Assembly (NCBI GenBank): GCA_964304625.1
Contig: OZ199839.1
Location: forward strand, 5,138,698-5,202,697
Length of the DNA: 64,000 nucleotides
Direction: 5' to 3'
Source of the DNA: Kudoa neothunni
Lineage: Eukaryota > Animalia > Cnidaria
Each line of letters begins with the position of its first letter. Within the stretch, counting starts at the first letter, position 1. The notes under the pieces are model-generated. The model was not told the origin of the DNA, searched no databases, and saw only the letters and a list, made by a program, of their open reading frames with translations. This document shows, in pieces, positions 9,001-45,829 of this stretch. A program made the translations under genes and the position numbers.

Positions 9001-12000
9001 TTCCATCCTCTTGGAAAAGCAAGACTGCCTGGCTCCGTATTTTATTGGCAGTGCTGATCAGGCTAAAAATACGGATGTAGAATATAAATGGGTGAATTTT
9101 GTTAATGAGAAATATGTTTAGATTGATGAGAACCAAATGACGGAGGAAATTGAATCTATAAAGGCGTATTGTGAGGAATTTTTCAAAATTCAACCTCCAA
9201 GAAAATCCTCAAAAGATTGTGTTACGACTGTATTTGATTAATTATTGTGTTTGAACGATTTTTTACAACACATTAGTTGATTAATCTAACTAAAAGTGTT
9301 TGTAACTTGTGTGACAATGCTGTTTTGATGAGTCTACAAATGAAAGACGGAGGGGAAATCAAAAACTCACAGAAGGATCGAGCCGAATTACTTAACAAAT
9401 GCAAAGAGTTGCTTACCAATTCCATTCTAATGGCCGATTCGTTAAATGAACACAAACAAGTATATAAGTGGTAACACTTGTTTACGTAATTTTTTTGTTG
9501 CAGTGTGTTCTACTTGACGCAATGCCAATAACGGCAAAAGCAGCCTCCGAAAAAACTAAAACGAGTGCCAAAGAACTAGGCACATTGGTCAATATATATA
9601 CCGAGAAGTATTTGTCGAAACAAAGCAGCGCCAAAAATCTTGAAAAGACACTCAAACGAGTATTTTGAGTTAATATTATCAATAAAAATACTCAGATGTC
9701 TCTATTTAATAGTTAGACGAATATATCAATAACAAAGGAGAACCGAGAGCTGTTACGGGTGGGGATGAATTGGTCAAATCAGAGCAAATTGTTGGTGAAA
9801 TCATCAATATAAATAAAAATATGGTATTTGCTGATTGTTATTGTAGTTGACATTATTTTTGCGATATAGGTCAAATGTACAGCTAGTAATATCGACGAAT
9901 TGCCCAATCTTCAGTGCCAGGCAACTTCATGTTTCGGTGATCTATGTCAAGAAATTGAAGAATTACAAATTGTACCTCATATCAACATGTAGAATATTAA
10001 CCAATTCACTATTAGAATAACGATGATATACTGGATAGCATATTTAAATTGGGTAACGCAACATTATGTATGGGCAATGTTATAGGTCAATATACAAATG
10101 ACCCTAAAAATCCCAACAACAGAAAACAATTTGCTCAAAATTCCAAGAATACTTTAGATTGTGTAATTTTGTTGAGACTGAAGTTATATTTCACTTTTAT
10201 TTTAGGCAGCAAACGTTATGAAAACACTTCAATCGACAAAAGGTGTTGAAGTTATATTTTCAAAATTCTGCAAAGAATTACAGACCCACATATCCGATGC
10301 GGAAGCTTCGCAATTATTTGCAGAAACTGGAACCCTTGACTTCTTGACTTCAGAATCTTTCGAGAGTAACGCGTATGTTCTTTATATAATTTATATTTCC
10401 ACATTCGTAATAAAAATACCGCTAAATAATATTTTAAATCTATATACAATTCTAACAAATTTTTTTCAGGAGTAAAGTAGAAGCAAAATGTGATGTAATT
10501 ATGAAATTGCTAAAAGATCTTGAGAACGCGGTGATCAACGGGACTGATTTCAACCCTTCGATTAATGAGCTTTCTGTGGCTTTGAAAGAGCTCGGAGAAA
10601 TTATTAATGAGACTGTTTCTTCGCTTGGAAGTGACGACAAAGATTCACAAGTATATCTTGCTTAGAAGTAGAAGCATGGTATTAAATGCATTTATATCTA
10701 AATAGGTTGATCTAATAAAAAATCACTATGAGTTTTTGTCAACTCTCAACAACACTCTAAGTGACTACAAATCTAAGGATCGCAATAGGTTTAGCACAAA
10801 AGATGCGGTCACAGCCCTACAACGCTCTAAGGAAGGTTTCACCTCTAGATCCCAGTCCCAAAACAATAGCCAGGCTGCTATTCAAGATCTCAAGCAGCAT
10901 GTGGACCAAAGATTCAAAAAGATATTATCGTCCAACTGTGACAATCTCTCAACCAGTGATGAACACATTGAACCCGAAAAATTGGTCCGCCTTTCCAAGA
11001 ATATCACGGAGACCTGCCAGAAATTGATGGGCGCTTACAACAACAAGAAAACTTCTGAGTATCCCACCCATTGCTCCAAAGGCAAGCAAAGTCTTGATGA
11101 ATTCCTCAACAACATGGAGAACTATCTATCCGAATGCAAATCGGATCCAGAATTTATGGCATCATCCAAAAATCTAGTTATGGATAGTCTTTCAAATATT
11201 TCTTGTTGTTTCACCACGCTACTTTCGTCTTTGCAAAAGTCGTTGACATCTACAGACGAAGCCAAACTGCAGGTCAATTCAGCATCGAGAGAAGTCACTC
11301 AAAGTTTGGTCAAATTCCTGAAAGTAATGTCCAAAATCAAGGGCAATGCATTTGTGGATCCAGATGATCCAAACATTCAAGCAGAAAAAGAACTATTCAG
11401 TGCTGCTGCCAAAATTGAAGCGGCTGCTAAGAAGTTATCCGAACTCAAACCCAGAAAAGTTAGTGAAACTGGTGAAGTCAATGAAAATCTCAATTTCGAG
11501 GAACAAATCATCGAAGCGGCTACATCCATTACTAATGCAGCAAAGTTGCTCGTGGCAGCCGCCACTCATGCTCAACGAGAATTAGTTTCCAGTGGTGTGT
11601 TCTTTTCCTCATCTTCCAACTCCAAAGAAGATGGGCAATGGTCTCAAGGACTGATTTCGGCGGCCCAACTTGTTGCTCAAGCAACCAGCGATCTTTGTGA
11701 AGCAGCCAACTCAGCTGTCAAAGGCGAGGCAAATGAGGAAAAAATTGTTGCGGCTGCCAACAGCATTTCTCATTCTACAATTCAATTAATTATGGCATGC
11801 AAAGTAAAGGCTGATCCTTTCAGCAAGGGTCAAAAACGACTTCAAGTATTTTATTCAGTCACTGAGCATGTTTATATTTAATCTTTATCGACTGTAGGCT
11901 TCTGGTAATGCAATCAAAAAAGCTACTAAGGCATTGGTTGAAGCTGTTCATAATTCCGGTGTGTTTAAACGTGAGGAAGATGTGGTTGTTCCGGAAACTC

Positions 12001-24828: not shown

Positions 24829-25963
24829 TAGGGTTTTGCGCGACTATCAAATTCGGACATTTTGCGCAGCATAAAAACTAATGTTTAAAATGTAAAATTT
24901 TATGATTAATGCCACGTAGATAACTATTTACATATTTTAATCTCGCGCCACATCTTCCACCAAGTGGCATTTACCTAAAAAGGTTTCCGAATGTTCAAAA
25001 AATTTTATAATTTCACTTCCAGTGACCGAGGAAGCAGAACTATCCATTCTATCAATTAAATCATTTCTTCCTCTAATTGGGCCATTTCGTCTTACTCTTG
25101 ATTTAATTAAGGAGAATACCTCTTCGCAAGGGTTGAGAAATGGTGAATATCTCGGAAGATACTGTATTTCTCCAGAAAAAATGTCGTAAAACTCAACATT
25201 GGAATCTCACATTATCCATTGCAATAATAAAATTTCGTCAATCCATCGCTTCCTCTACCTTTTTTAAAAATGATTGAAAATTTTCCGTGTTCACTGAACC
25301 GAAAATAGCCTCGCAATAGATAAGACCTTTTCCGTTAATGACCAATATCATTGTGACATTATTTCCTCGGCTGTTCGGAACTACTGCATTAGGGGTGGTG
25401 TCTCTTAAGGACCCGCCGTGGCTTCTTAACATGCAGAGGGAAAAGGGACTTTCATCCACAAAAATAAGATTTTCGTATCTTGTGGTTATGGGAAGTTGAG
25501 TATACCATTCAGCAAACTTTTTTCTCTCTGACTTTACATCATAGGAATTTCTACTCAGCGGTACCGTTCTTACCATTTTAAATGTTATGTTCATGGATGT
25601 CAACCAGCTTGAGACAGTCGCGGGATTAACGTTTAATGATAATTTTTCAATCATCAACGCAAGAGTTAAGATGCAATCATCGTTAATCAAGTCCAACAAT
25701 TTCCTCTTGATTTCTCCGTTAAAAATAACTCTTCGTGCTCCACCTGGCGGCAAATTTTCAAAAGAATCTCTCGCTAGAAATCTTTGAACGATATCGTTCA
25801 CAGTTGATCTTGGAACATCTAGATTCTAGATCATCTGCAACCTCTTTTTGTGATCTTCCCTGTTTGATAACTAGTTTAATCACTCTTTTCCTTGTTTCAC
25901 TCGTGTGCTTTGCGTATCCAACCATTTTTGTTTTTACTGTTTACTAACGCGCGCAAAACCCGG
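24829..25963 (-). mobile_element. Tc1/IS630-type element with frameshifted transposase (24937-25925)
   Basis: TA-flanked short TIRs (TAGGGTTTTGCGCG / CGCGCAAAACCCGG). N-terminal HTH, then IFVDESPF, MDNVRF and YLPRYSPFLNPCEE. Confidence 0.9.
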
Positions 25964-36894: not shown

Positions 36895-37590
36895 TCAGAG
36901 ATTATTGATGAACCTTCGTGGGTATGTGTATCTTCTTATCAAAAGGTACGATAACATAACAACTAGTGAAATAATAATAGCAAGAATCAATAGTCCAGCT
37001 ATTATCTTAAAACAATTCTTGTATCCTTTTGGTATTTTTAGGTCGCTTTCAGCGAACCTTAATGCAATAGTTGATGTAGATATAGTAGATTCGTCGGTAA
37101 TGTCCGTTTTAGTCAAGCTGTCCCACTCTTTCGAATGTATTATTGATATTTCCGAATTTATTGTTGTCATGGATATGGCGATAATTTTTGATGGTGTAAT
37201 ATCAGTCACTGATAAGTGTATCGATGTAGTTTTAATGTCAGATTCTTGAGTAAAGGTAGTTCCCATCGAATCCTCGTAGCTTTCGAGAGGTGATAATTTA
37301 GTTGTTTCAGTTCTAACATAAGTTTAATACGTTATTATAAAATTGTTTGAACCTAATTATTTCTTGATCTAGGGGAGCTATTGAACCAAAGGCTGGGTCG
37401 ATAAATATGTAATGGTAGTGTTTAAAAATTGGGGTGTATGTTCTAGATAAAGAAAATTATTGATATCAATAACACAGTTACATCCTTATAAAATTTATTA
37501 ATAATTGTTCATTTTTGGATGAGATTTCATTTAGCAGTGTATATATAATAATAAAATGAAAACATCTGGAGAACGATTTGGTCCTCCTCT
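36895..37590 (-). CDS. Unassigned single-pass membrane protein with Ser/Thr-rich stalk (5' structure unresolved, may be partly decayed)
   Basis: Three exons splice in frame through GT-AG introns into ORF 36895-37266. Thr/Ser-rich region, TM segment IIAGLLILAIIISLVVMLSYLLI, basic tail RRYTYPRR. Confidence 0.55.
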
Positions 37591-38943
37591 AAATAAACAT
37601 GAAGTAAGAAAATGATGTGTTCATTTTATCGGAAAGGGGGGGGGGTATGTCATCTAGATTATGTTGTAGTAAAATTCATTGCGCGTATATGAAAAATCAA
37701 TAACGTATGTAAACACACAACTACTATTATGCAAGCCCCCACTATCTAACGTGTATATATTTCGTGTGCTTATAGGTATTTTCATTTATGGGATAACTAT
37801 TATTCCACATATGATGTGCGGCCTTCAACAGATTATAATTAGGGATAGTAGTTTTCGACATTTATTTTGATTGATTCAGTAACGCGCAAGCGTGAATGTT
37901 TAAACACTTTTAAATTAAAAAAATTTGGAACCAGCTCCCCCACACGACTTTTTCATCAAATAAAGATAGCAGGAGAGCATCGAGAATAATAATAGAAACT
38001 AAAATTTTCACAATTTTGTCCTTTTTTTCTCTCTAAAAAAATAACCGGCAGAGAGAGTAGTGCCTTGAAACGCTTTTTAACGATGTTTCATTTAATGTAT
38101 TTGCTTGCAAATTCTACTTTGTTGTGGAGATAATTTCATATTTAAATATTTAGAGGGTTACTCATTTTCCACCATCGCTATATCGATCCATTCAACAAAA
38201 AATATCATTTTCTCTCCAGTTATCACTCCTTTTGAGTTATTCGGAAGATTCCTAATTTTACCGGAAAACAAACGGGGGGGGGCTTTTTTAAAAATTCGAT
38301 TATTAAAATCGATTTTTATCGAAAACTACGATCCCCAATTATAATCTTATACATGAGGATCACATTTGTTAGATTTAGGAAAGATATAATTAAAAAAAGT
38401 TGTATAGAAATATTTTAATACTTGGAATCGACTTAAAAGTTTTTTTATTAAATGAAATTATAATTTCTAATCTTACTAATAAATTGTTAAAATAATACAA
38501 CTTAAAAAAATACAACCATATTATCTTTCAACTAGAGATAAAAAATATATTTATTTCATAATTTTAATTATAACGAATTTTTTTATTCATTCAAAATATT
38601 TCTAATCATTATTTAAAGTTATTATGTAAAATTTGTTAGGTAATTATTAAATTTTTTCTTCATTTATGTTTATTATTGATTCAAATAAAATACAAACATT
38701 AGAAAAATTTTCTGACGAAAAATTCATCATAAAATAAGAAAACATGAAATTTAAATTAATCTCTCAAGTGTACATACGAAACAACGTTGTGAAAATTCTA
38801 CTGATTCCAAACTTGTAATTTTCAATACACAATTAATCTTTCCATTTTATCGTTAAAATCACTACGAATTTTATTGGTAAATACAAAAGTTAAAATATAA
38901 TTTGTATATAATAAGCATCAAAAAGAAAAGACAATTAAATAAA

Positions 38944-41900
38944 GACAGTGGCTATTCTCATGGTAATGAATATCTCCATAATTAACAAAGCTATCTATGT
39001 TTGATTCCATAAACGTATATAACTAATTTTTATCTAATTTTATATGACCAAATATTTTAATTGTTCCTATACATAATTATATAGCTTCATTCACCCACGT
39101 AACGTTGTTTAACATTACAGGTGACAAGTTTTCTACGTGTATAACTTTATATCAAAAACTTTTTCATGTAACGTAACAGCATTATTGGTGCATCTTATTA
39201 AAAAAACTATGCATTTTCTTATTTCGCAGATTCACTTTTGAATTTAACAACGTCGAAAATCGATGTATTTTTGAGATAATAAATATAAACCTAATAACTT
39301 ATGCTCCGATGATAATCCATATGTAACAGAGATTGTTTTTATTTCCATTTTTCTCCAATATTCGGAAATATCGCTTCAAACCTATATATATACAACATCT
39401 TCATGTATGAGGATGTACACATCAACCCCTTGGATTCCAGTATATACTTAAATATACATAATAGTAATTGGGGTTTCAAAAACGCTCTGTTCCGAATAGT
39501 CCTTTTGAAATAGTTAAAAAGGATTATAATTACTTTGATTCTTATTGTATTAAAATTTTAATTAATTTCAATAAACTTAAAAAAACTATATTATTCAAAA
39601 GTTTTTAAATCATTCTATGTTTTAAAGTAGGAGAATCAATCCAGAATTTTTTCGAAAGTTTGTAAATTTGCGTTTATGATAAAAGTATTAATGTATAATA
39701 ATGACCAATTAAAAATATTTGTGGTATTATTTACGACAAAATACAAAATTTAATCTAGAAAAGGATGCAAACTTTTTTTATACTTAAATATACATATTAA
39801 AATCACAAATAATTATGATTCAACAATTATTATTTTGGGATTTTACTTTATATTTTTGGATTCAAACACATATTTAAATATATAATTTTTTATTCGTAAG
39901 CTAAAAGTATTTGGACTCGAAAGTGTTAAAAACATAATATTCAATACATTTGTCTTTTAAAAAGAAAGCAGAGTTTACATAATAATTTAAGAGAAGATTT
40001 CGAAAAATTTATGTTGAAATGAATTCTTAAGTGCTTTGATATAGTCCGCGCACACGAAGCAAAAATGGCTGGTGAAAACGGTGATTTCTTCTTTGTTGGA
40101 ATGAAATTCGGTTCACACGAAATGATCAAAATCAAAATGAAAGAGTACGAAGAGGCCAATTACTGTAATTTAAAAATGAAAATTTCTAGAACTATTATTA
40201 ATGCACAACATCGGCTAAACCGCATTTTAAATCCCAATCACATTTATTATGAAATTGGATGCATTTGTTTTTTCAGTAAGATAAATACAAGCAAAAGTAA
40301 AGGTCTTCGAAACAAATCATCTTTCAAGAATGGTTTCCCCTTTAGTATTACTCTTAGGGCTAGCTCTTGTGGGAATTTCCCCTAGGTAAAATCCGTATGT
40401 TTGGCACACAATCATGAAAATGATGTGATCATCTACAAAAATTTACCTGACCAGAGGAAAATTAACCTCTCAGATTCTTTCATGTTGGAATTAATATCAT
40501 TGCGCGCCAACAAAAAACTTATTCAGTCGAGGTTGAATGATGAAACAGGGAAAAATATTTCCCTTAAATCCCTCCATAACATTGAAAAATTTCCTCCTAT
40601 CAAAGCGGACAACATTAATTCGATTGTGAAACTACTCAAAGAAGACTACAATTGTGAGGTGAAAATATTGGCCAATGAAAACTCTGTAACTGGAATATTT
40701 TTTAAGGACGAGGGAATGAAGAGAGTGCTTGAATTATTCCCCGAATAGATGTTTATCGATGCGACCTATAAACTGCTAGATTCCTGATATCTAAAAATTA
40801 TGTCTGCTGTCAATTATATGTACATTTGTAGAGCACTTATATATATCTTTCAGCTGTACAAGATTCATTTAAACAGACCCATCTTACGAGCAGATGTATT
40901 CTCTACGAAGAGACTGAAGAGGCCATTAGGTGGTACTTAAACGACTTGGTTGTTGTCGCTCCATGGTTTAAAATAAAGGTATCCACTATTGTTACAGACA
41001 AAGATAAATGCTTGAGAAAATGTTTCAAAATGACATTTACCAATGCATTACTTCACTGTGCAGATTTCATGCGCATCAAATTTTTCAAAGGGAGGTAACG
41101 GTGCAAAAACAGAAGTAAATTCGACAGCTTGTATGATGAGCTTTGTCAACAGAGCCCCTCAGCGTTTATTGATTATTTTGATAAAGATTGGAAGCCTATA
41201 GTGGACGAATGGATTGTTGGCGTAAGCAATGTTAAAAGCTTTTACGATAGTGCATCGAACAACAGTCTTGAGACAATAAATAATAAAATAAAATCAGTTA
41301 CCAACAAGTTTTCAACTCTTGATGAATTTTTCGCAAAGTTTTTGTCTTTTTTGAAATCAACGAGGATTGAACGAATTAATGCCATTGTATCTAAGCTTTT
41401 AAGGTCCTCCGACCCTAATATCAGCAATCAATCCTACAAAGATTGTTTGGATTTTCTCACTCCTTATGCAGTTAATTTAGTTTCATTGGAGTTATTGAAA
41501 GTAACGAATGCAAAAAATCGACAAGGATCAGACGTTGCCACTTGCGATTGTTTGTTTGTTTCAAAGGTCATTTAATCTCCCATGCAGACATAGTTTATAC
41601 GAAAGGGAAATCACGCAAATATGCATGTTTGACAAATCATTATGCGATCCTCGTTGGGCAAGAAAACATATATATAGTTATTTAAAAAACACTAACTACA
41701 GTAATGCCTCAAAAAATTCGAAGGAAATTATTAAAATCAAACCTAATGATTCTATTGGGACTTCCTCACAAAGACTGAAACTGTCATCTGTTTATTGCAA
41801 AAAGTTGGCGACAACCTCTGCAGAATTTTGTGGAATCTTCTATAAGACATGCATCAAAAGTTTTAAAACTCTAGAGGTTATCATTAAAAACCACGAGGAA

Positions 41901-43409
41901 AAAAAGCTATCAACCATTATTGAACTAAGTTGTTTATTGTGTTTGCATTGTTAATAAAAATTTTAGTGCAAGCTGATCTATCCACAATCAAGTTAATGCG
42001 CTCAACTATAAATTCGGAATCTGAAGATGAAATAATTAGCGTAGGTATGGATGTTAGGTTTTAATTCTGTTGTTATTGATATTTTTAGATGAGCCCGAAC
42101 CTATTGTCGAAGATAATACAAGTCTCAAATTTTTTCAATGTTGTGATGTATATATTCATATCTCTAGGTGAAACAACACATAACGAGCCTGAGTCCAACC
42201 AAACACATTATCCCTAAAGGATTACCATAGGTGATGAATTAAAAAGTATAAATGTAAAATTTTGATTAATTTACTTATGATCTAACTATCCCACCAAAAA
42301 TAAAATCCACTAGTCGACCCAAGGGTAGTAGAACAACCGCTATTGGACTTAAAAAACAAAGAAAAAGAAAAAACTAATATAATAATTATATTTACGTATT
42401 ATTTCTGAGTAAATTCATGTTTACGCTCTTATTCAGCAATAATTTAATAGTCACGCAATATTTACCAATGTATTTATTTGGTTATTTTTATGAACACCTC
42501 AACAGAGGTGTTAAGATAGATCATTCTCATAGCTTTAAAACGGATGAAAAACTTTTGAATATTAAAACCGAGAATGAATAGAATTATTATTTTAAGTTAC
42601 CTCTAGTATTGCTTCCAAAATAACCCTCGTAATTTTGTTTAATAAACTTAATATAAATAATAACAAATTAATGAATTATCAAAGACTGCGTAGGGAAAAT
42701 TCGGTCCGCAGAGTTTTGCGTTAAATTTAAATTTTGATACGTATTGATTTAATAAGTATCATATTGAAAGTTTCTGCCGGCAGTTTACATCTTACTACAA
42801 TAAAATTATAGAAAATGATTCTGAAGATTTTCTCGTGTTTATTTTTGTTTCGCTATATTATTATTTCCTTACGTAATATTATGGATTACCTATAGGTTTT
42901 ATAACTACGGCTCTTGGGAAATTCGAAGCACTGATGTGACACTGGCAACATGCAAGTGTGCCGCCCAACATTGAACAAATATCACAATAAAATAACCTAG
43001 GTTTATATACAATGAATTAAATTTAGTTGATTTTTTTTATTGCTAAAATATTCTAAAATTTCAACAGTTAGAGCTGTGACTGACGGCTGTAATCAATGAT
43101 AGATTCCTTTACTGTAATACGCGTTTTTAAAATATAAGAATCCTTGCTCTTTTTAAAAAATGCACCAATAATGTTGTTATGTTGCATGAAAAAGTTTCCT
43201 ATATGAAGTTAGACGTGTAGAAAACTTGTCATCTGTAATGTTAAATAACGTTAAGTGGGCGAATGGAGCAATATAATTATATGTATGGAAAGTAAAATAA
43301 TTTGTCATAGATAATTAGATAAAAATTAGTTGTATACGTTTATGAAATCAAACATTAGATAGTTTTGTTAATTATGAAGATATTCATTACCATGAGAATA
43401 GCCATTGCC
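38944..43409 (+). mobile_element. Mutator-like element (MULE) with SWIM-type transposase pseudogene (~40065-42377)
   Basis: ~260-bp imperfect TIRs (38944-39200 vs 43150-43409) and 9-bp TSD TTAAATAAA/TTAGATAAA. Motifs FIDATYKL, IVTDKD, C.FH, NNSLETINNKIK and SWIM CDC..LPCRH, with stops and frameshifts. Confidence 0.93.
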
Positions 43410-43477
43410 TTAGATAAATTTTTGCAATTATACATTGAATTTATCAAATTAAAACCGAGAATGACATACACCAATTT

Positions 43478-45829
43478 TTATCTTAGAGTATTAAATACAC
43501 AATGAGTTTTTTCGAACTTCAAGAATTTTCGCGTCAACTCACCGATAAATAGACCATTCCACTTGAAACCTAAATTATAAACCTAAATAAAAATATGAAT
43601 ATTTGATTACGTTCAATCCATACTGTAATTTCTTTAGTATCTCTTAGGAGAAGCTTATTTTTTAGGCCCGACAAGTTACAGAGTTTGTTATTTCCACAAA
43701 TTCTACTATCATAAGCGACAGATTTGATTATATCGACGCAAGCTTCCAAGTTATATTTTCCGACAAATTTATTACTAAAATTAATTAATGATTTTGCTAT
43801 GCAGTCCCAGTCCTGAACAATTTTTTCGTCATCAACATATTCCGATACATCATCAGGAATACAAGGATGATGGACTACTTCATCTTTGGAATAAGTATTC
43901 GACCTTATTATCTCCTATATAGTAAAACCATTTATTACACATCAACCTTCAATTGAACTACTTTTATCAAGTGATAATAGGTTGCGTGTAAAATTTTATG
44001 GGAACCCAAACAATAAAAGCTGTTCACCGCTGCGGTATATTTTTGATTTCGTATGGAAAATTCTTGGACAATCCATTTGTCAAACAGACCGGGATTGTCT
44101 GTGAATATTCCCACAGAAAATTTATTGCCTGTCAAAATAATAAATGATTTCTTCTCCAAAATCTACAAGTTAATATTAAAAGTGGTAAGACTTGAAAATT
44201 ACTGAATTTTCAAAGTCGTAATTTTTTTTCAACAATTCCAAAATGCCATCTATAGTTTCTTCAGGCTTCACCTGAATTGTTGAAACTAGTTCAAAACGTT
44301 TCAATTGGGTTATATCGTTAATGTCCTGTTTAAGTATGGTTCGAAACTCTCTTTCTGTGTGCCTTAAAATTTAAAATTATAAAAGTACATAAATTTAATT
44401 TACTTATATTTGATATTCAGCGCGTAGATAAAGTGTAAAAAAATGGTCGGATTCTTTATATTGCTCCAATTACATTGATCAATTATTGCTTTTTCGCATT
44501 TATTTACGTGAGAATAATCTATTAAATTTTTTTTATATTGTAAAAAAATAATAAAAACCAACATTCTTTATATTTAACATTTGTTATGTTGATTTTATTA
44601 AATTACAAATTTTACAATAATGTTGCGCCTTAAATTTAAAATTATTGTTATACTCATCCAAAGTGTTAATTTCACAATAATTATAATCCATTTTGGATTA
44701 ACTCATTTAATAACTGTATAAAACTCTTTTTAATTAATAAAATTATTATTTTTTGGTATTTTCTTTAAAAATTTTATTTTGAACTCTCTGACAAGTGTAA
44801 ACAGTAATCGATTGGAAGCATAGCGTATATTGGAACCCATGAATGCGACGGATAGTTAAATAAACAATTCATTTATATTTTAGCTTGAATATTTTATGGT
44901 AGCTGTACTTAAATTAGAGATTTGTGAGGGATTTTTTAATGATAAAAAACACCAGGTGCTGATTTAACCTAAATGTTATACATATACCCTATCTGAGAAA
45001 GGAGTTTTTTTAATTTTTGCGTATTTTTAACTGTGGGAAAATAAAATAAAAAAAAGATATATTAAATGATAAAAAGTTATATTTTGTATAGTTTGGGTGT
45101 AAAATATTAACGGAAAAAAAGTTTTCTTTAAAAATTTCGAAAATGTACATTTTAAACCTACGTCGTGTCCTACATATACCAAAGATAATTTTATTACATA
45201 TTTTTATTTTCTTTCTCAATTTGCCATGCCACATAACACTTTATTGTTTAAAATATTTTTATTCAAATGTTTTAATGCCTTTATTCGCTAATTAAAATAA
45301 TTGTGATTAAATAGTCCAATATGTTTAGAAAAAAAACATGAAGATACAACTCTGATTAGAACTGCTTATGCAAATAAACTAATCAAACAAATACAGTTGT
45401 AATAAAAAAATTTTTTAGTTTTTTTTATAATGTCAAAATTAATACCGGAATCTAAATATACTTTTGAAAACTATAACATAACTCATTCAAATCAATAAAT
45501 ATGAATATTTAAACCAAGAAATAGTCAGCTATGGGAATATTATACGTTTATGCGAAAATGACCATTGGTTTATAAATTAAATACCTGCACATGATCCGCC
45601 TTTAACGTTGAGTTTTTTAAACCATGATTTTTCGTCGTCAGGCAAATACATTCGGTCATAACAGTAGAACCAAACATACTCAGCACTTTTGTGTATCACT
45701 ATTCCATACTTGGAAAAGTATTAGATAAATTTATCAAATAATATTTACATGTTGGCCTAAGACATTGAATAGCGGGAAATTTATAAAAAACATTGTTAGA
45801 AAAATAAATTTTGTGATAGAAAGCATCAT
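43478..45829 (-). CDS. Divergent CD39/E-NTPDase (GDA1_CD39) family protein with degenerate apyrase conserved regions
   Basis: Exons 45829-45749, 45708-45585, 44518-44404, 44362-44203, 44162-43962, 43914-43624 and 43582-~43480 splice into one open frame. It reads signal peptide, YGIVIHKSAEY (ACR1 position), QEFSIRNQKYTAAVNSFYCLG, HHPC..WDC..GKYNLEAC..ICGNNKLCNLSG, matching the CD39 cysteine pattern as recalled. Confidence 0.8.

What the first reader, a model, noticed from the sequence alone, without database searches (positions are those of the whole stretch)
43478..45829. Hidden CD39/NTPDase homologue that keeps its fold but has lost its catalytic motifs (candidate secreted pseudo-apyrase)
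Seen: seven exons splice without stops, starting with a signal-peptide-like MMLSITKFIFLTMFFINFPLFNVLG-QH. Known: E-NTPDases need ACR1 DxG (CD39 D54), ACR2 ATAG, ACR3 Glu (E174) and ACR4 DxGG (D213). By eye, ACR1 YGIVLDAGSS becomes YGIVIHKSAE, ACR2 VYLGATAGMR becomes IFLHFIYALN and ACR4 ALDLGGAST becomes IILTGNKFS; only the ACR3 EE seems retained. Structural cysteines and intron phases (0,1,2,0,0,0) match CD39 as I recall them. Inference: the frame was maintained after catalytic loss, so it may be a non-catalytic host-interface protein, such as a nucleotide binder or decoy in purinergic signalling.
Basis: partly seen in the sequence, partly recalled or inferred. Interest (0 to 1): 0.85.

Follow-up and report, generated by a model that had tools for sequence, protein, structure and literature searches.

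The report
Dead CD39-like membrane protein, Kudoa
This gene from a tuna-muscle parasite (very probably Kudoa neothunni) is one of about 36 copies descended from an ATP-degrading surface enzyme that kept its cysteine framework and gene layout but lost its nucleotide-binding loops, so it is probably a non-enzymatic surface protein.

Summary
The seven exons, their phases (0,1,2,0,0,0), the signal-like start and the degenerate motifs are all present on the minus strand. The CD39/NTPDase ancestry is supported, but not by Pfam, which is blank exon by exon. Support comes from profile-profile alignment (exon 6: 88% probability, E 3e-6; six exons collinear). It also comes from an intact ten-cysteine ecto-NTPDase gene in the same genome with near-identical exon lengths and seven identical intron phases. 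A fold of exon 6 alone has rat NTPDase1/2 as its best PDB matches, though with weak scores.

- The stop at 43478 is probably intronic. A donor right after the exon-7 Cys codon, as in paralogues and the intact gene, joins three further open exons about 5.9 kb downstream, across a MULE transposon. That gives a ~561-aa protein with a Ser/Thr-rich stalk and a transmembrane anchor, not a secreted one.
- The "retained EE" lies 3-4 residues from the catalytic Glu position.

This is not a lone gene. At least 36 exon-6 copies exist in what is very probably Kudoa neothunni, and other first readers flagged other copies in this genome. Expression could not be tested. The spliced protein was never joined or searched whole.

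The parts
45749..45829 (-). Exon 1: Met plus hydrophobic signal-like peptide (27 codons), phase-0 donor
   Evidence: Kyte-Doolittle 15-residue maximum is 2.0, and paralogues have equivalent 28-31-codon first exons 41-62 nt upstream of exon 2.
45585..45708 (-). Exon 2: begins YGIVIHKSAEY, the degenerate ACR1 (phosphate loop 1); Cys16 and Cys40; ends in phase 1
   Evidence: hhalign to NTPDase profile columns 59-75, E 0.037, opposite YGVVVDAGSSG. The intact gene's exon 2 starts FGFIFDAGSTGTR at the same exon boundary.
44404..44518 (-). Exon 3: ...EKAIIDQC... then IFLHFIYALNIKY, the degenerate ACR2; ends in phase 2
   Evidence: Cognate exon of the intact gene reads ...AKTAIDQC...IWMKFIGTGGLRNL, same phases. 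hhalign e3-c3 is exceeded by 1 of 60 shuffles.
44203..44362 (-). Exon 4: ACR3 region ...VKPEETIDGILELLKKNY; Asp-38 aligns with the catalytic Glu
   Evidence: hhalign to NTPDase profile columns 155-202, E 0.09, ungapped.
43947..44162 (-). Exon 5: degenerate ACR4 (SFIILTGNKFSVG) and the FYC cysteine; phase 0 at both ends
   Evidence: End-to-end register with the intact gene's exon 5 (VVDIGGSSLQVG ... NFKCGG). 23 six-frame matches in the genome at E<=10, about 15 of them strong (E<1e-9).
43624..43914 (-). Exon 6: cysteine-rich lobe, HPC...C...GKY...C...C...CNLS, 97 codons
   Evidence: hhalign against NTPDase4/7 profile: E 1.8e-5, 78%; E 3.2e-6, 88%. Against the intact gene's exon 6: score 25, 0 of 60 shuffles reach it. 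AF2 fragment has NTPDase1/2 as top PDB matches.
43499..43582 (-). Exon 7 as re-modelled: 28 codons ending in the conserved Cys codon, donor TGT|GTATTT, phase 0
   Evidence: Same donor position in paralogues L024, L029, L026 and in the intact gene (TGC|GTAAGA).
43478..43498 (-). It would be the stop of a truncated product if the intron is retained.
   Evidence: It lies between the donor and the transposon end at 43420.
38933..43420 (+). MULE/ZSWIM-type DNA transposon inside intron 7, with ~290-nt terminal inverted repeats and broken transposase ORFs at 40065-41954
   Evidence: Inverted repeats I1-I3, 78-89% complementary. ZSWIM3_N domain E 3.6e-6. Dozens of diverged copies in the genome.
37482..37588 (-). 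Exon 8: RRTKSFSRCFHFIIIYTLLNE..., counterpart of the NTPDase QCFKSAW helix
   Evidence: hhalign to NTPDase profile columns 430-457, E 0.007. Against the intact gene's exon 8, 0 of 60 shuffles reach the score.
37353..37442 (-). Exon 9: ...YIFIDPAFGSIAPLD, the family-conserved FxDPxFGSI motif at the expected place of ACR5
   Evidence: No significant alignment to NTPDase ACR5.
36895..37312 (-). Exon 10: Ser/Thr-rich stalk (36% S+T over 95 residues), TM helix LLILAIIISLVVMLSYLLI, basic tail RRYTYPRRFINNL, stop TGA

Best explanation
The locus encodes one member of a Kudoa-lineage family of type I membrane glycoproteins, with at least 36 exon-6 copies in this genome. The family arose by duplication of a ten-cysteine ecto-NTPDase (CD39-type) gene. 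The ectodomain keeps the disulfide framework, an invariant N-x-S sequon, the exon-intron layout and probably the two-lobed fold of the parent enzyme. The two phosphate-binding loops (ACR1 DxGS, ACR4 DxGG), ACR2 and the catalytic Glu position have been replaced in every copy examined. It is therefore a pseudoenzyme that most likely neither hydrolyses nor canonically binds nucleotides.

The complete gene has ten exons (45829 to 36895, about 561 codons): signal peptide, dead CD39-like domain, mucin-like stalk, transmembrane helix, short basic tail. Intron 7 was expanded from roughly 40-150 nt to 5.9 kb by a MULE transposon.

Shown: the homology, the motif loss, the family size, the gene architecture and purifying selection on the family.

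Inferred: that intron 7 is spliced, that the protein sits on the parasite surface, and that it works as a binding or coat scaffold at the host interface rather than as an enzyme.
For: Homology:
- The exon-6 family profile aligns to a profile of 33 NTPDases with E 1.8e-5 and 3.2e-6, 88%.
- Best hits of e2, e4, e5, e6, e8 and e10 fall at profile columns 59-75, 155-202, 249-273, 304-378, 430-457 and 511-538, strictly collinear. Reversed controls scatter.
- An intact ecto-NTPDase gene in the same genome (DAGSTGTR, GTGGLR, DIGGSS, WTLG, C-terminal TM) has exon lengths 99/142/148/166/204/285/99 against 81/124/115/160/216/291/84 here, with seven identical intron phases.
- Four Cys and one Gly are invariant across the family plus the intact gene in exon 6.
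- The AF2 model of exon 6 has NTPDase2/NTPDase1 as 10 of its top 11 Foldseek hits. NTPDase1 residues 271-410 give the longest VIA alignment.

Motif loss in all copies.

Ten-exon, TM-anchored model.

Family and selection: 36 exon-6 matches, nearly all open. dN/dS is 0.29-0.38 in the closest pairs, and pN is far below saturated pS for this copy. A foreign metagenome contig shows the same exon order and the same dead ACR4.

Organism: assembly statistics match Kudoa neothunni, and the mitochondrial code is table 4.
Against: - No RNA evidence at all. The only RNA runs (host-fish metatranscriptomes) laid no reads, so neither expression nor the 5.9-kb splice is shown.
- Pfam GDA1_CD39 is not detected in any single exon, PDB HMM searches are blank, and the ESM Atlas gave nothing.
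- Exons 3, 7 and 9 give no signal against the NTPDase4/7 profile, and exons 2, 7 and 9 give none against the intact gene.
- Fold-search scores are individually weak (E about 1, Z 2.5), from a fragment model with pLDDT 64.
- The whole spliced protein was never searched or folded, so the two-lobe fold is inferred.
- Surface location and any binding function are untested.
Confidence: 0.7

Rival explanations
1. One reading: a 363-aa secreted, C-terminally truncated pseudo-apyrase that ends at the TAA at 43478. This would happen if intron 7 is retained or the transposon has abolished splicing to exon 8.
For: The frame does run 18 nt past the donor into a stop. Intron 7 is about 100 times the median intron length for this genome (49 bp). 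[quoted passage not shown] No RNA data exclude it.
Against: The product would lack the last lobe-closing segments (exons 8-9) that every paralogue and the intact enzyme keep. Exons 8-10 (202 in-frame codons) remain open with good splice sites, even though the transposon's inverted repeats have diverged to 78-89%. The donor after the Cys codon is the ancestral one.
Confidence: 0.15
2. A recently inactivated copy: the transposon insertion split the gene, and both halves are decaying relics that have not yet acquired stops.
For: There is a 4.5-kb MULE plus further repeats in intron 7. No expression evidence exists. dS against all paralogues is saturated, so recent relaxation cannot be seen.
Against: All 10 exons are open and all splice sites are GT-AG. 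Every family-invariant residue is kept (G18 W30 F35 F49 C51 V68 in exon 5; H16 P17 C18 C38 G52 C59 C73 C79 N80 S82 in exon 6). The insertion is not young, judged by repeat divergence.
Confidence: 0.1
3. Not a CD39 relative at all: a lineage-specific cysteine-rich membrane protein family whose resemblance to NTPDases is chance or convergence.
For: No Pfam, PDB-sequence or Atlas hit. Most single-exon hhalign E-values are only 0.01-0.1. Fold-search scores are weak.
Against: Exon 6 alone reaches E 3e-6. Six hits are collinear. Seven intron phases are identical and exon lengths are near-identical with a bona fide NTPDase gene in the same genome. The ten cysteines correspond one to one. A blind Foldseek search ranks NTPDase1/2 first among 350,542 chains.
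Confidence: 0.04
4. Still a nucleotide-handling protein: an enzyme or nucleotide-binding decoy that uses non-canonical residues.
For: This copy has Asp at the position of the catalytic Glu, and a family-conserved Glu lies three residues upstream. Parasite ecto-NTPDases are known to modulate host purinergic signalling (review PMC8630654, listed; abstract only read).
Against: Both DxG phosphate loops, which hold the phosphates in all ASKHA phosphotransferases (established knowledge), are replaced by unrelated and non-conserved residues in every copy. The genome keeps a separate intact ecto-NTPDase for that job.
Confidence: 0.03

Closest known systems
Cell-surface ecto-NTPDases of the CD39 type (NTPDase1/2/3/8; rat NTPDase1 PDB 3zx3, rat NTPDase2 PDB 3cj1)
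   Same: Extracellular domain with a ten-cysteine framework and a membrane anchor after the last conserved region. They are the best structural matches for the exon-6 model. Profile alignment is collinear along the domain.
   Different: All five apyrase conserved regions are degenerate. A cleavable-looking signal peptide replaces the N-terminal TM helix. A Ser/Thr-rich stalk is inserted before the C-terminal TM. There are two extra cysteines. Pfam does not detect it.
The intact ecto-NTPDase gene of the same genome (G000 C1, about 884-886 kb; L044)
   Same: Same exon-intron layout for the first seven introns (phases 0,1,2,0,0,0,0) and near-identical exon lengths. Cysteines at the same exon positions, and shared local strings (AIDQC; C-KSLI; RCF). 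C-terminal TM.
   Different: The intact gene keeps DAGSTGTR, GTGGLR, DIGGSS and WTLG and has no stalk. It is single-copy as far as seen, whereas the dead family has at least 36 exon-6 copies.
Intracellular NTPDase4/7 (mig-23/ntp-1 type), including this genome's copy at C2:7278745 (L001)
   Same: Same superfamily. This is the profile against which exon 6 scores E 3e-6.
   Different: Different gene structure: ACR2 to ACR4 lie in one exon in L001. It has two TM helices and intact motifs.
Pseudoenzyme surface families of parasites in general; ENTPD5/mt-PCPH as the only 'catalytically inactive' CD39-family protein found in the literature search (PMC3829800; title and abstract only)
   Same: An enzyme fold retained without catalysis.
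   Different: mt-PCPH is a mutated oncogenic form of one mammalian gene, not a natural expanded family. No paper in the searched library links pseudoenzymes with NTPDases or describes a CD39-like family in Myxozoa.

Membership tests
GDA1/CD39 nucleoside phosphatase family (Pfam PF01150) | Match to the Pfam model above the gathering score (24.9 bits) | tested here: not met
   No exon matches at E<=10. The six-frame genome scan does not flag the locus. The joined protein was not searched because it has no reference. Even the motif-intact Kudoa gene only reaches 19.9 and 11.3 bits per exon.
GDA1/CD39 nucleoside phosphatase family (Pfam PF01150) | ACR1 phosphate-binding loop DxG(S/T) | tested here: not met
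   YGIVIHKSAEY lies opposite YGVVVDAGSSG. None of the five e2 copies found has DxG.
GDA1/CD39 nucleoside phosphatase family (Pfam PF01150) | ACR2 (A/G)T(A/G)G(M/L)R | tested here: not met
   FIYALNIKY lies at the exon-3 end where the intact gene has FIGTGGLRNL. The register comes from shared exon boundaries and the AIDQC string, not from a significant alignment of the motif itself.
GDA1/CD39 nucleoside phosphatase family (Pfam PF01150) | ACR3 catalytic Glu (GxxEGxYxW..NY) | tested here: inconclusive
   The ungapped alignment (E 0.09) puts Asp-38 of exon 4 at the Glu position, with Ser/Thr/Ile/Ala/Gly in paralogues. A family-conserved Glu sits 3 residues upstream. G and NY are kept.
GDA1/CD39 nucleoside phosphatase family (Pfam PF01150) | ACR4 phosphate-binding loop DxGG | tested here: not met
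   FIILTGNKFSVG lies opposite VVDIGGSSLQVG of the intact gene. None of the 10 aligned or 13 HMM-collected exon-5 copies has DxGG, nor does the foreign contig.
GDA1/CD39 nucleoside phosphatase family (Pfam PF01150) | ACR5 (G..WTLG) | tested here: not met
   Exon 9 has FIDPAFGSI where the intact gene has NAPNWTLGKM. There is no significant alignment.
GDA1/CD39 nucleoside phosphatase family (Pfam PF01150) | Common descent from a bona fide member (shared gene structure, cysteine framework, profile similarity) | tested here: met
   Seven identical intron phases and matching exon lengths. Invariant Cys/Gly in exon 6. hhalign E 3e-6 and collinearity.
GDA1/CD39 nucleoside phosphatase family (Pfam PF01150) | Two-lobe ASKHA fold | tested here: inconclusive
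   Only exon 6 could be folded by reference (pLDDT 64). Its best PDB matches are NTPDase1/2, but at E about 1 and Z 2.5. The whole-protein fold was not made.
Pseudoenzyme (homologue of an enzyme lacking catalytic residues, maintained by selection) | Homology to an enzyme, loss of essential catalytic or binding residues, and evidence of constraint | tested here: met
   Homology and motif loss as above. Frames are open in nearly all of 36 exon-6 copies. dN/dS is 0.29-0.38 in the closest pairs. Lack of activity itself cannot be tested with these tools.
Type I membrane protein | N-terminal signal peptide, single C-terminal TM helix, positive-inside tail | tested here: met
   By hydropathy only: exon 1 KD maximum 2.0; exon 10 has a 19-residue segment at KD 3.07 followed by RRYTYPRR. 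This depends on exon 7-8 splicing, which is not shown. No dedicated signal-peptide predictor was available.

The most novel reading that the evidence does not exclude
The dead-CD39 family is the main variable surface coat of Kudoa plasmodia or spores. In this reading a nucleotide-hydrolysing ectoenzyme was converted into a glycosylated, stalk-mounted binding or shielding scaffold, then diversified to 30-55% identity among about 36 copies to interact with host muscle-cell components or evade them. This would be a previously unrecognised parasite surface-antigen family built on the ASKHA fold.
Probability: 0.25. Interest if true: 0.8.

Novelty: new variant of a known kind. Interest (0 to 1): 0.62.

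Why it matters
Myxozoans are drastically reduced cnidarian parasites with about 5,300 predicted genes, and almost nothing is known about their surface molecules. A family with at least 36 exon-6 copies that standard annotation cannot name stands out in so small a genome. Pfam is blank, and there is one fragment among 1.84 billion public proteins.

The family shows a route by which an ectoenzyme becomes a non-catalytic membrane scaffold. It is a natural pseudoenzyme branch of the CD39 family, which I could not find described. It also supplies candidate surface antigens or markers for Kudoa, which spoils tuna and other fish flesh.

The same genome keeps an intact parent-like enzyme. That makes a clean paired experiment possible, with active and dead ectodomains assayed side by side.

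Tried and rejected
- Pfam on each of the seven exons: nothing.
- Six-frame PF01150 scan of the genome: locus not flagged.
- HMM search of PDB sequences with exon-5 and exon-6 profiles: no NTPDase.
- Exhaustive representative search with the exon-6 profile: one true hit, a 91-aa metagenome fragment, and no NTPDase.
- ESM Atlas on exons 5 and 6: no usable hit.
- RNA-seq: the only RNA runs carry the same coded species label as the DNA runs (presumably the host fish) and laid zero reads, so this is no test of expression or junctions.
- hhalign gave no signal for exons 3, 7 and 9 against the NTPDase4/7 profile, nor for exons 2, 7 and 9 against the intact gene.
- I looked for paralogues with several exons in one natural open frame, to fold more than one exon by reference. 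Only e4+e5 read-throughs with intron-encoded linkers and e8+e9 exist, so these were not used.
- Naming the species by a COX1 protein search was dropped. TGA codons break the frame under table 11, and the length filter would exclude full COX1. The organism was identified from assembly statistics in PMC12239612 instead.
- An early guess of an insect or nematode genome was rejected by the mitochondrial code: AGR codes Arg at conserved sites.
- Left out by rule: joining the exons into one protein for Pfam, HHpred-type or AlphaFold analysis.
Full report
**What is at the coordinates**

The feature is a gene on the minus strand. An ATG at 45829 opens a 27-codon hydrophobic exon, followed by six more GT-AG exons that read without stops to a TAA at 43480-43478. 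The exons are 45829-45749, 45708-45585, 44518-44404, 44362-44203, 44162-43947, 43914-43624 and 43582-43478. Introns are 40, 1066, 41, 40, 32 and 41 nt, with phases 0,1,2,0,0,0.

**The organism**

- The assembly has three contigs of 17.15, 12.04 and 11.05 Mb plus an 18.2-kb contig.
- The small contig carries a very divergent COX1 with eight in-frame TGA codons. At three universally conserved arginine sites it uses AGR codons. That is mitochondrial code 4, so the organism is not a bilaterian.
- ARAGORN found no tRNA gene in the first 10 kb.
- A G3 2025 paper (PMC12239612) reports a Kudoa neothunni genome recovered from yellowfin-tuna reads. Its figures are 40.2 Mb, scaffold N50 12.0 Mb, three chromosomes plus a circular mitochondrion, 30.41% GC, median intron 49 bp and 5,316 predicted proteins. 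It also reports almost no parasite RNA reads.
- These figures match this assembly (40,260,978 bp; C2 is 12,040,071 bp; window GC about 30%).
- I take the genome to be K. neothunni, a myxozoan (parasitic cnidarian) of tuna muscle. The identification rests on matching statistics, not on sequence identity.

**It is a family, not a lone gene**

- Exons 5 and 6 each have about 23 six-frame matches. A profile of exon 6 finds 36 matches at E<=0.001, nearly all with open frames, on all three chromosomes and often in tandem.
- Fourteen paralogue loci were fetched. They share the exon order and the short introns.
- In 1.84 billion public representative proteins, the exon-6 profile finds only one true relative. 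This is a 91-aa fragment on a 901-bp ENA metagenome contig.
- That contig (30% GC) carries exons 4 to 8 of a family member in the same order, with the same dead ACR4. It is at most 45% identical to any copy here, so it comes from another species.
- Other first-stage readers flagged other members in this genome as 'pseudo-apyrases'. Those notes are unverified and come from the same kind of reader. I used them only as leads.

**The real 3' end**

- Paralogues have three more conserved exons after exon 7: a '...ECFHLNIIYTLL...' exon, a '...YIFxDPxFGSI...' exon, and a Ser/Thr-rich stalk with a transmembrane helix and a short basic tail.
- In the window these lie on the same strand at 37588-37482, 37442-37353 and 37312-36895. 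They are open and have good splice sites.
- Exon 7 has a GT donor directly after its conserved Cys codon (43499|43498, phase 0). Paralogues L024, L029 and L026 splice at that point, and so does the intact NTPDase gene described below.
- That intron is 5,910 nt instead of the usual ~40-150 nt because a MULE/ZSWIM-type transposon sits in it, at 38933-43420.
- The transposon has ~290-nt inverted ends that are 78-89% complementary, broken transposase ORFs and many diverged copies elsewhere.
- The full model is ten exons and about 561 codons: signal peptide, ectodomain, stalk (36% Ser+Thr), TM helix, tail.
- Whether the 5.9-kb intron is actually spliced is not shown.

**Is it a CD39/NTPDase homologue?**

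Direct sequence searches say nothing. Four other lines agree that it is.

1. *Profile-profile comparison.*
   - An alignment of 33 genuine NTPDases (A3) was compared with the exon-6 family profile. The results were 78% probability, E 1.8e-5, and 88%, E 3.2e-6 with 14 paralogues.
   - The match pairs 'HPC...GKY..C...C...CN' with 'DPCLP...GTG..C...C...C'.
   - The best hits of exons 2, 4, 5, 6, 8 and 10 fall at profile columns 59-75, 155-202, 249-273, 304-378, 430-457 and 511-538. They are in order and at the right spacing.
   - Reversed-sequence controls give scattered hits at E 0.1-0.8.
2. *A bridge gene.*
   - The genome has an intact ecto-NTPDase at C1, about 884-886 kb. It has ACR1 DAGSTGTR, ACR2 GTGGLR, ACR4 DIGGSS, ACR5 WTLG, ten cysteines and a C-terminal TM helix.
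   - Its exons are 99/142/148/166/204/285/99 nt, against 81/124/115/160/216/291/84 nt here.
   - The first seven intron phases are identical (0,1,2,0,0,0,0).
   - In both genes exon 2 starts exactly at the (Y/F)G of ACR1, and exon 7 ends on a Cys codon.
   - Local strings also correspond: EKAIIDQC with AKTAIDQC, FYCLG with FKCGG, and SRCF with ERCF.
   - Family profile against the cognate exon beats all 60 composition-matched shuffles for exons 6 and 8, and 59 of 60 for exons 3 and 5.
   - In a plain MAFFT alignment of exon 6, four Cys and one Gly are invariant across the family and the intact enzyme.
3. *Structure.*
   - Only single exons have a reference, so I folded exon 6 alone with a 16-row alignment. 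The result was pLDDT 63.7, with the core at 76-90.
   - Foldseek against 350,542 PDB chains gives no significant E-value. Even so, 10 of the top 11 hits are rat NTPDase2 and NTPDase1/CD39: probability 0.33-0.54, rmsd 2.9-3.6 A over 49-61 columns.
   - The Foldseek-independent aligner lists NTPDase1 residues 271-410 on model residues 8-96. This is the longest alignment in its table, but Z is only 2.5.
   - This evidence is supportive but weak.
4. *Pfam barely sees the intact gene either.* Per exon it reaches 19.9 and 11.3 bits. Its silence on the dead copies therefore carries little weight.

Together I put the homology at about 0.9.

**Catalytic motifs**

- Opposite ACR1 (YGVVVDAGSSG) this gene has YGIVIHKSAEY.
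- Opposite ACR4 (VVDIGGSSLQVG) it has FIILTGNKFSVG.
- At the exon-3 end, where the intact gene has FIGTGGLRNL, it has FIYALNIKY.
- At the ACR5 place it has FIDPAFGSI instead of NWTLGKM.
- None of the paralogues examined has a DxG in either loop, and neither does the foreign contig.
- For ACR3, the ungapped register anchored on the conserved G and NY puts Asp-38 of exon 4 at the catalytic Glu position, with Ser/Thr/Ile/Ala/Gly in paralogues. The intact Kudoa gene supports this register.
The second of those Glu residues is conserved in 11 of 13 copies.
- A three-residue indel could make that Glu the homologue of the catalytic one. This cannot be settled without a structure.
- The two DxG loops hold the phosphates in this fold (established knowledge of ASKHA phosphotransferases). 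I therefore think canonical nucleotide binding is lost, not only hydrolysis, which weakens the 'nucleotide decoy' idea.

**Constraint**

- All ten exons are open and every family-invariant residue is kept in this copy.
- For the closest paralogue pairs, dN/dS is 0.38 and 0.29 (Nei-Gojobori, counted per exon and pooled).
- For this copy, synonymous differences are saturated against every paralogue (pS 0.70-0.81) while pN is 0.36-0.45.
- That shows long-term purifying selection on the family. It cannot exclude recent inactivation of this copy.

**What could not be done**

- Expression and junctions: the single reads call laid nothing, because the RNA libraries appear to be of the host fish.
- Everything was done exon by exon, by reference.
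- The comparison with human CD39 intron phases was not testable.

**Literature**

- No paper in the searchable library links Myxozoa with CD39 or apyrase families. The only mention is a canonical ENTPD4 in Thelohanellus kitauei.
- No paper pairs 'pseudoenzyme' with NTPDase.
- The nearest case is the truncated, catalytically inactive ENTPD5/mt-PCPH oncoprotein (abstract only).

**Verdict**

The gene is longer than described and is probably membrane-anchored. It is one member of a large family, so its interest lies at the family level. I class it as a new variant of a known kind: a pseudoenzyme offshoot of ecto-NTPDases, expanded as stalked type I membrane proteins in a myxozoan.

Noticed in passing
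G000:C1 about 884,000-886,000, minus strand (L044:2588-4350): An apparently intact nine-exon ecto-NTPDase gene with DAGSTGTR, GTGGLR, DIGGSS, WTLG, ten cysteines and a C-terminal TM helix. Pfam barely detects it exon by exon. It is the likely parent type of the dead family and a natural positive control.
   Followed up: yes
window 38933-43420: A MULE/ZSWIM1-3-type DNA transposon with ~290-nt terminal inverted repeats (78-89% complementary) and broken transposase ORFs at 40065-41954 on the plus strand. Dozens of 64-78% identical pieces lie elsewhere in the genome.
   Followed up: partly
window 37830-38347: A 29-nt inverted-repeat pair (93% complementary) 460 nt apart, also inside intron 7. It is possibly a small MITE-like insertion.
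   Followed up: no
G000:C4 (18,219 bp; L039-L041): The mitochondrial contig is 43% GC in its first 10 kb (the nucleus is about 30% GC). COX1 is very divergent, with TGA=Trp and AGR=Arg (code 4). ARAGORN found no tRNA genes and Rfam found no families in the first 10 kb. The second half was fetched but not analysed.
   Followed up: partly
G000:C2:11538548-11539070 and C2:11577933-11578455 (L010/L011, L015/L016): Two family members about 39 kb apart give identical scores and alignments for every exon. This is either a very recent segmental duplication or an assembly duplication.
   Followed up: no
G000:C2:7278507-7279569 (L001): The canonical intracellular NTPDase4/7 (mig-23-like) gene of this genome, with ACR2 to ACR4 in one long exon. 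Its best named relatives are only 35% identical (Trichuris, Helobdella), which shows how fast this lineage evolves. A run of N (withheld or gap) lies about 1 kb downstream.
   Followed up: partly
window 10736-11878, plus strand: A 381-codon open exon with an I/LWEQ actin-binding domain (talin/Hip1R/Sla2 type; E 1.6e-24).
   Followed up: no
window 25238-25798, minus strand: An open frame with a DDE_3 (Tc1/mariner-like) transposase fragment (E 8e-8).
   Followed up: no
L038 (ENA metagenome assembly ERZ28624939, 901-bp contig): A 30%-GC contig carrying exons 4-8 of a family member from a different species. This shows that relatives of this parasite family occur unrecognised in a public metagenome.
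   Followed up: partly
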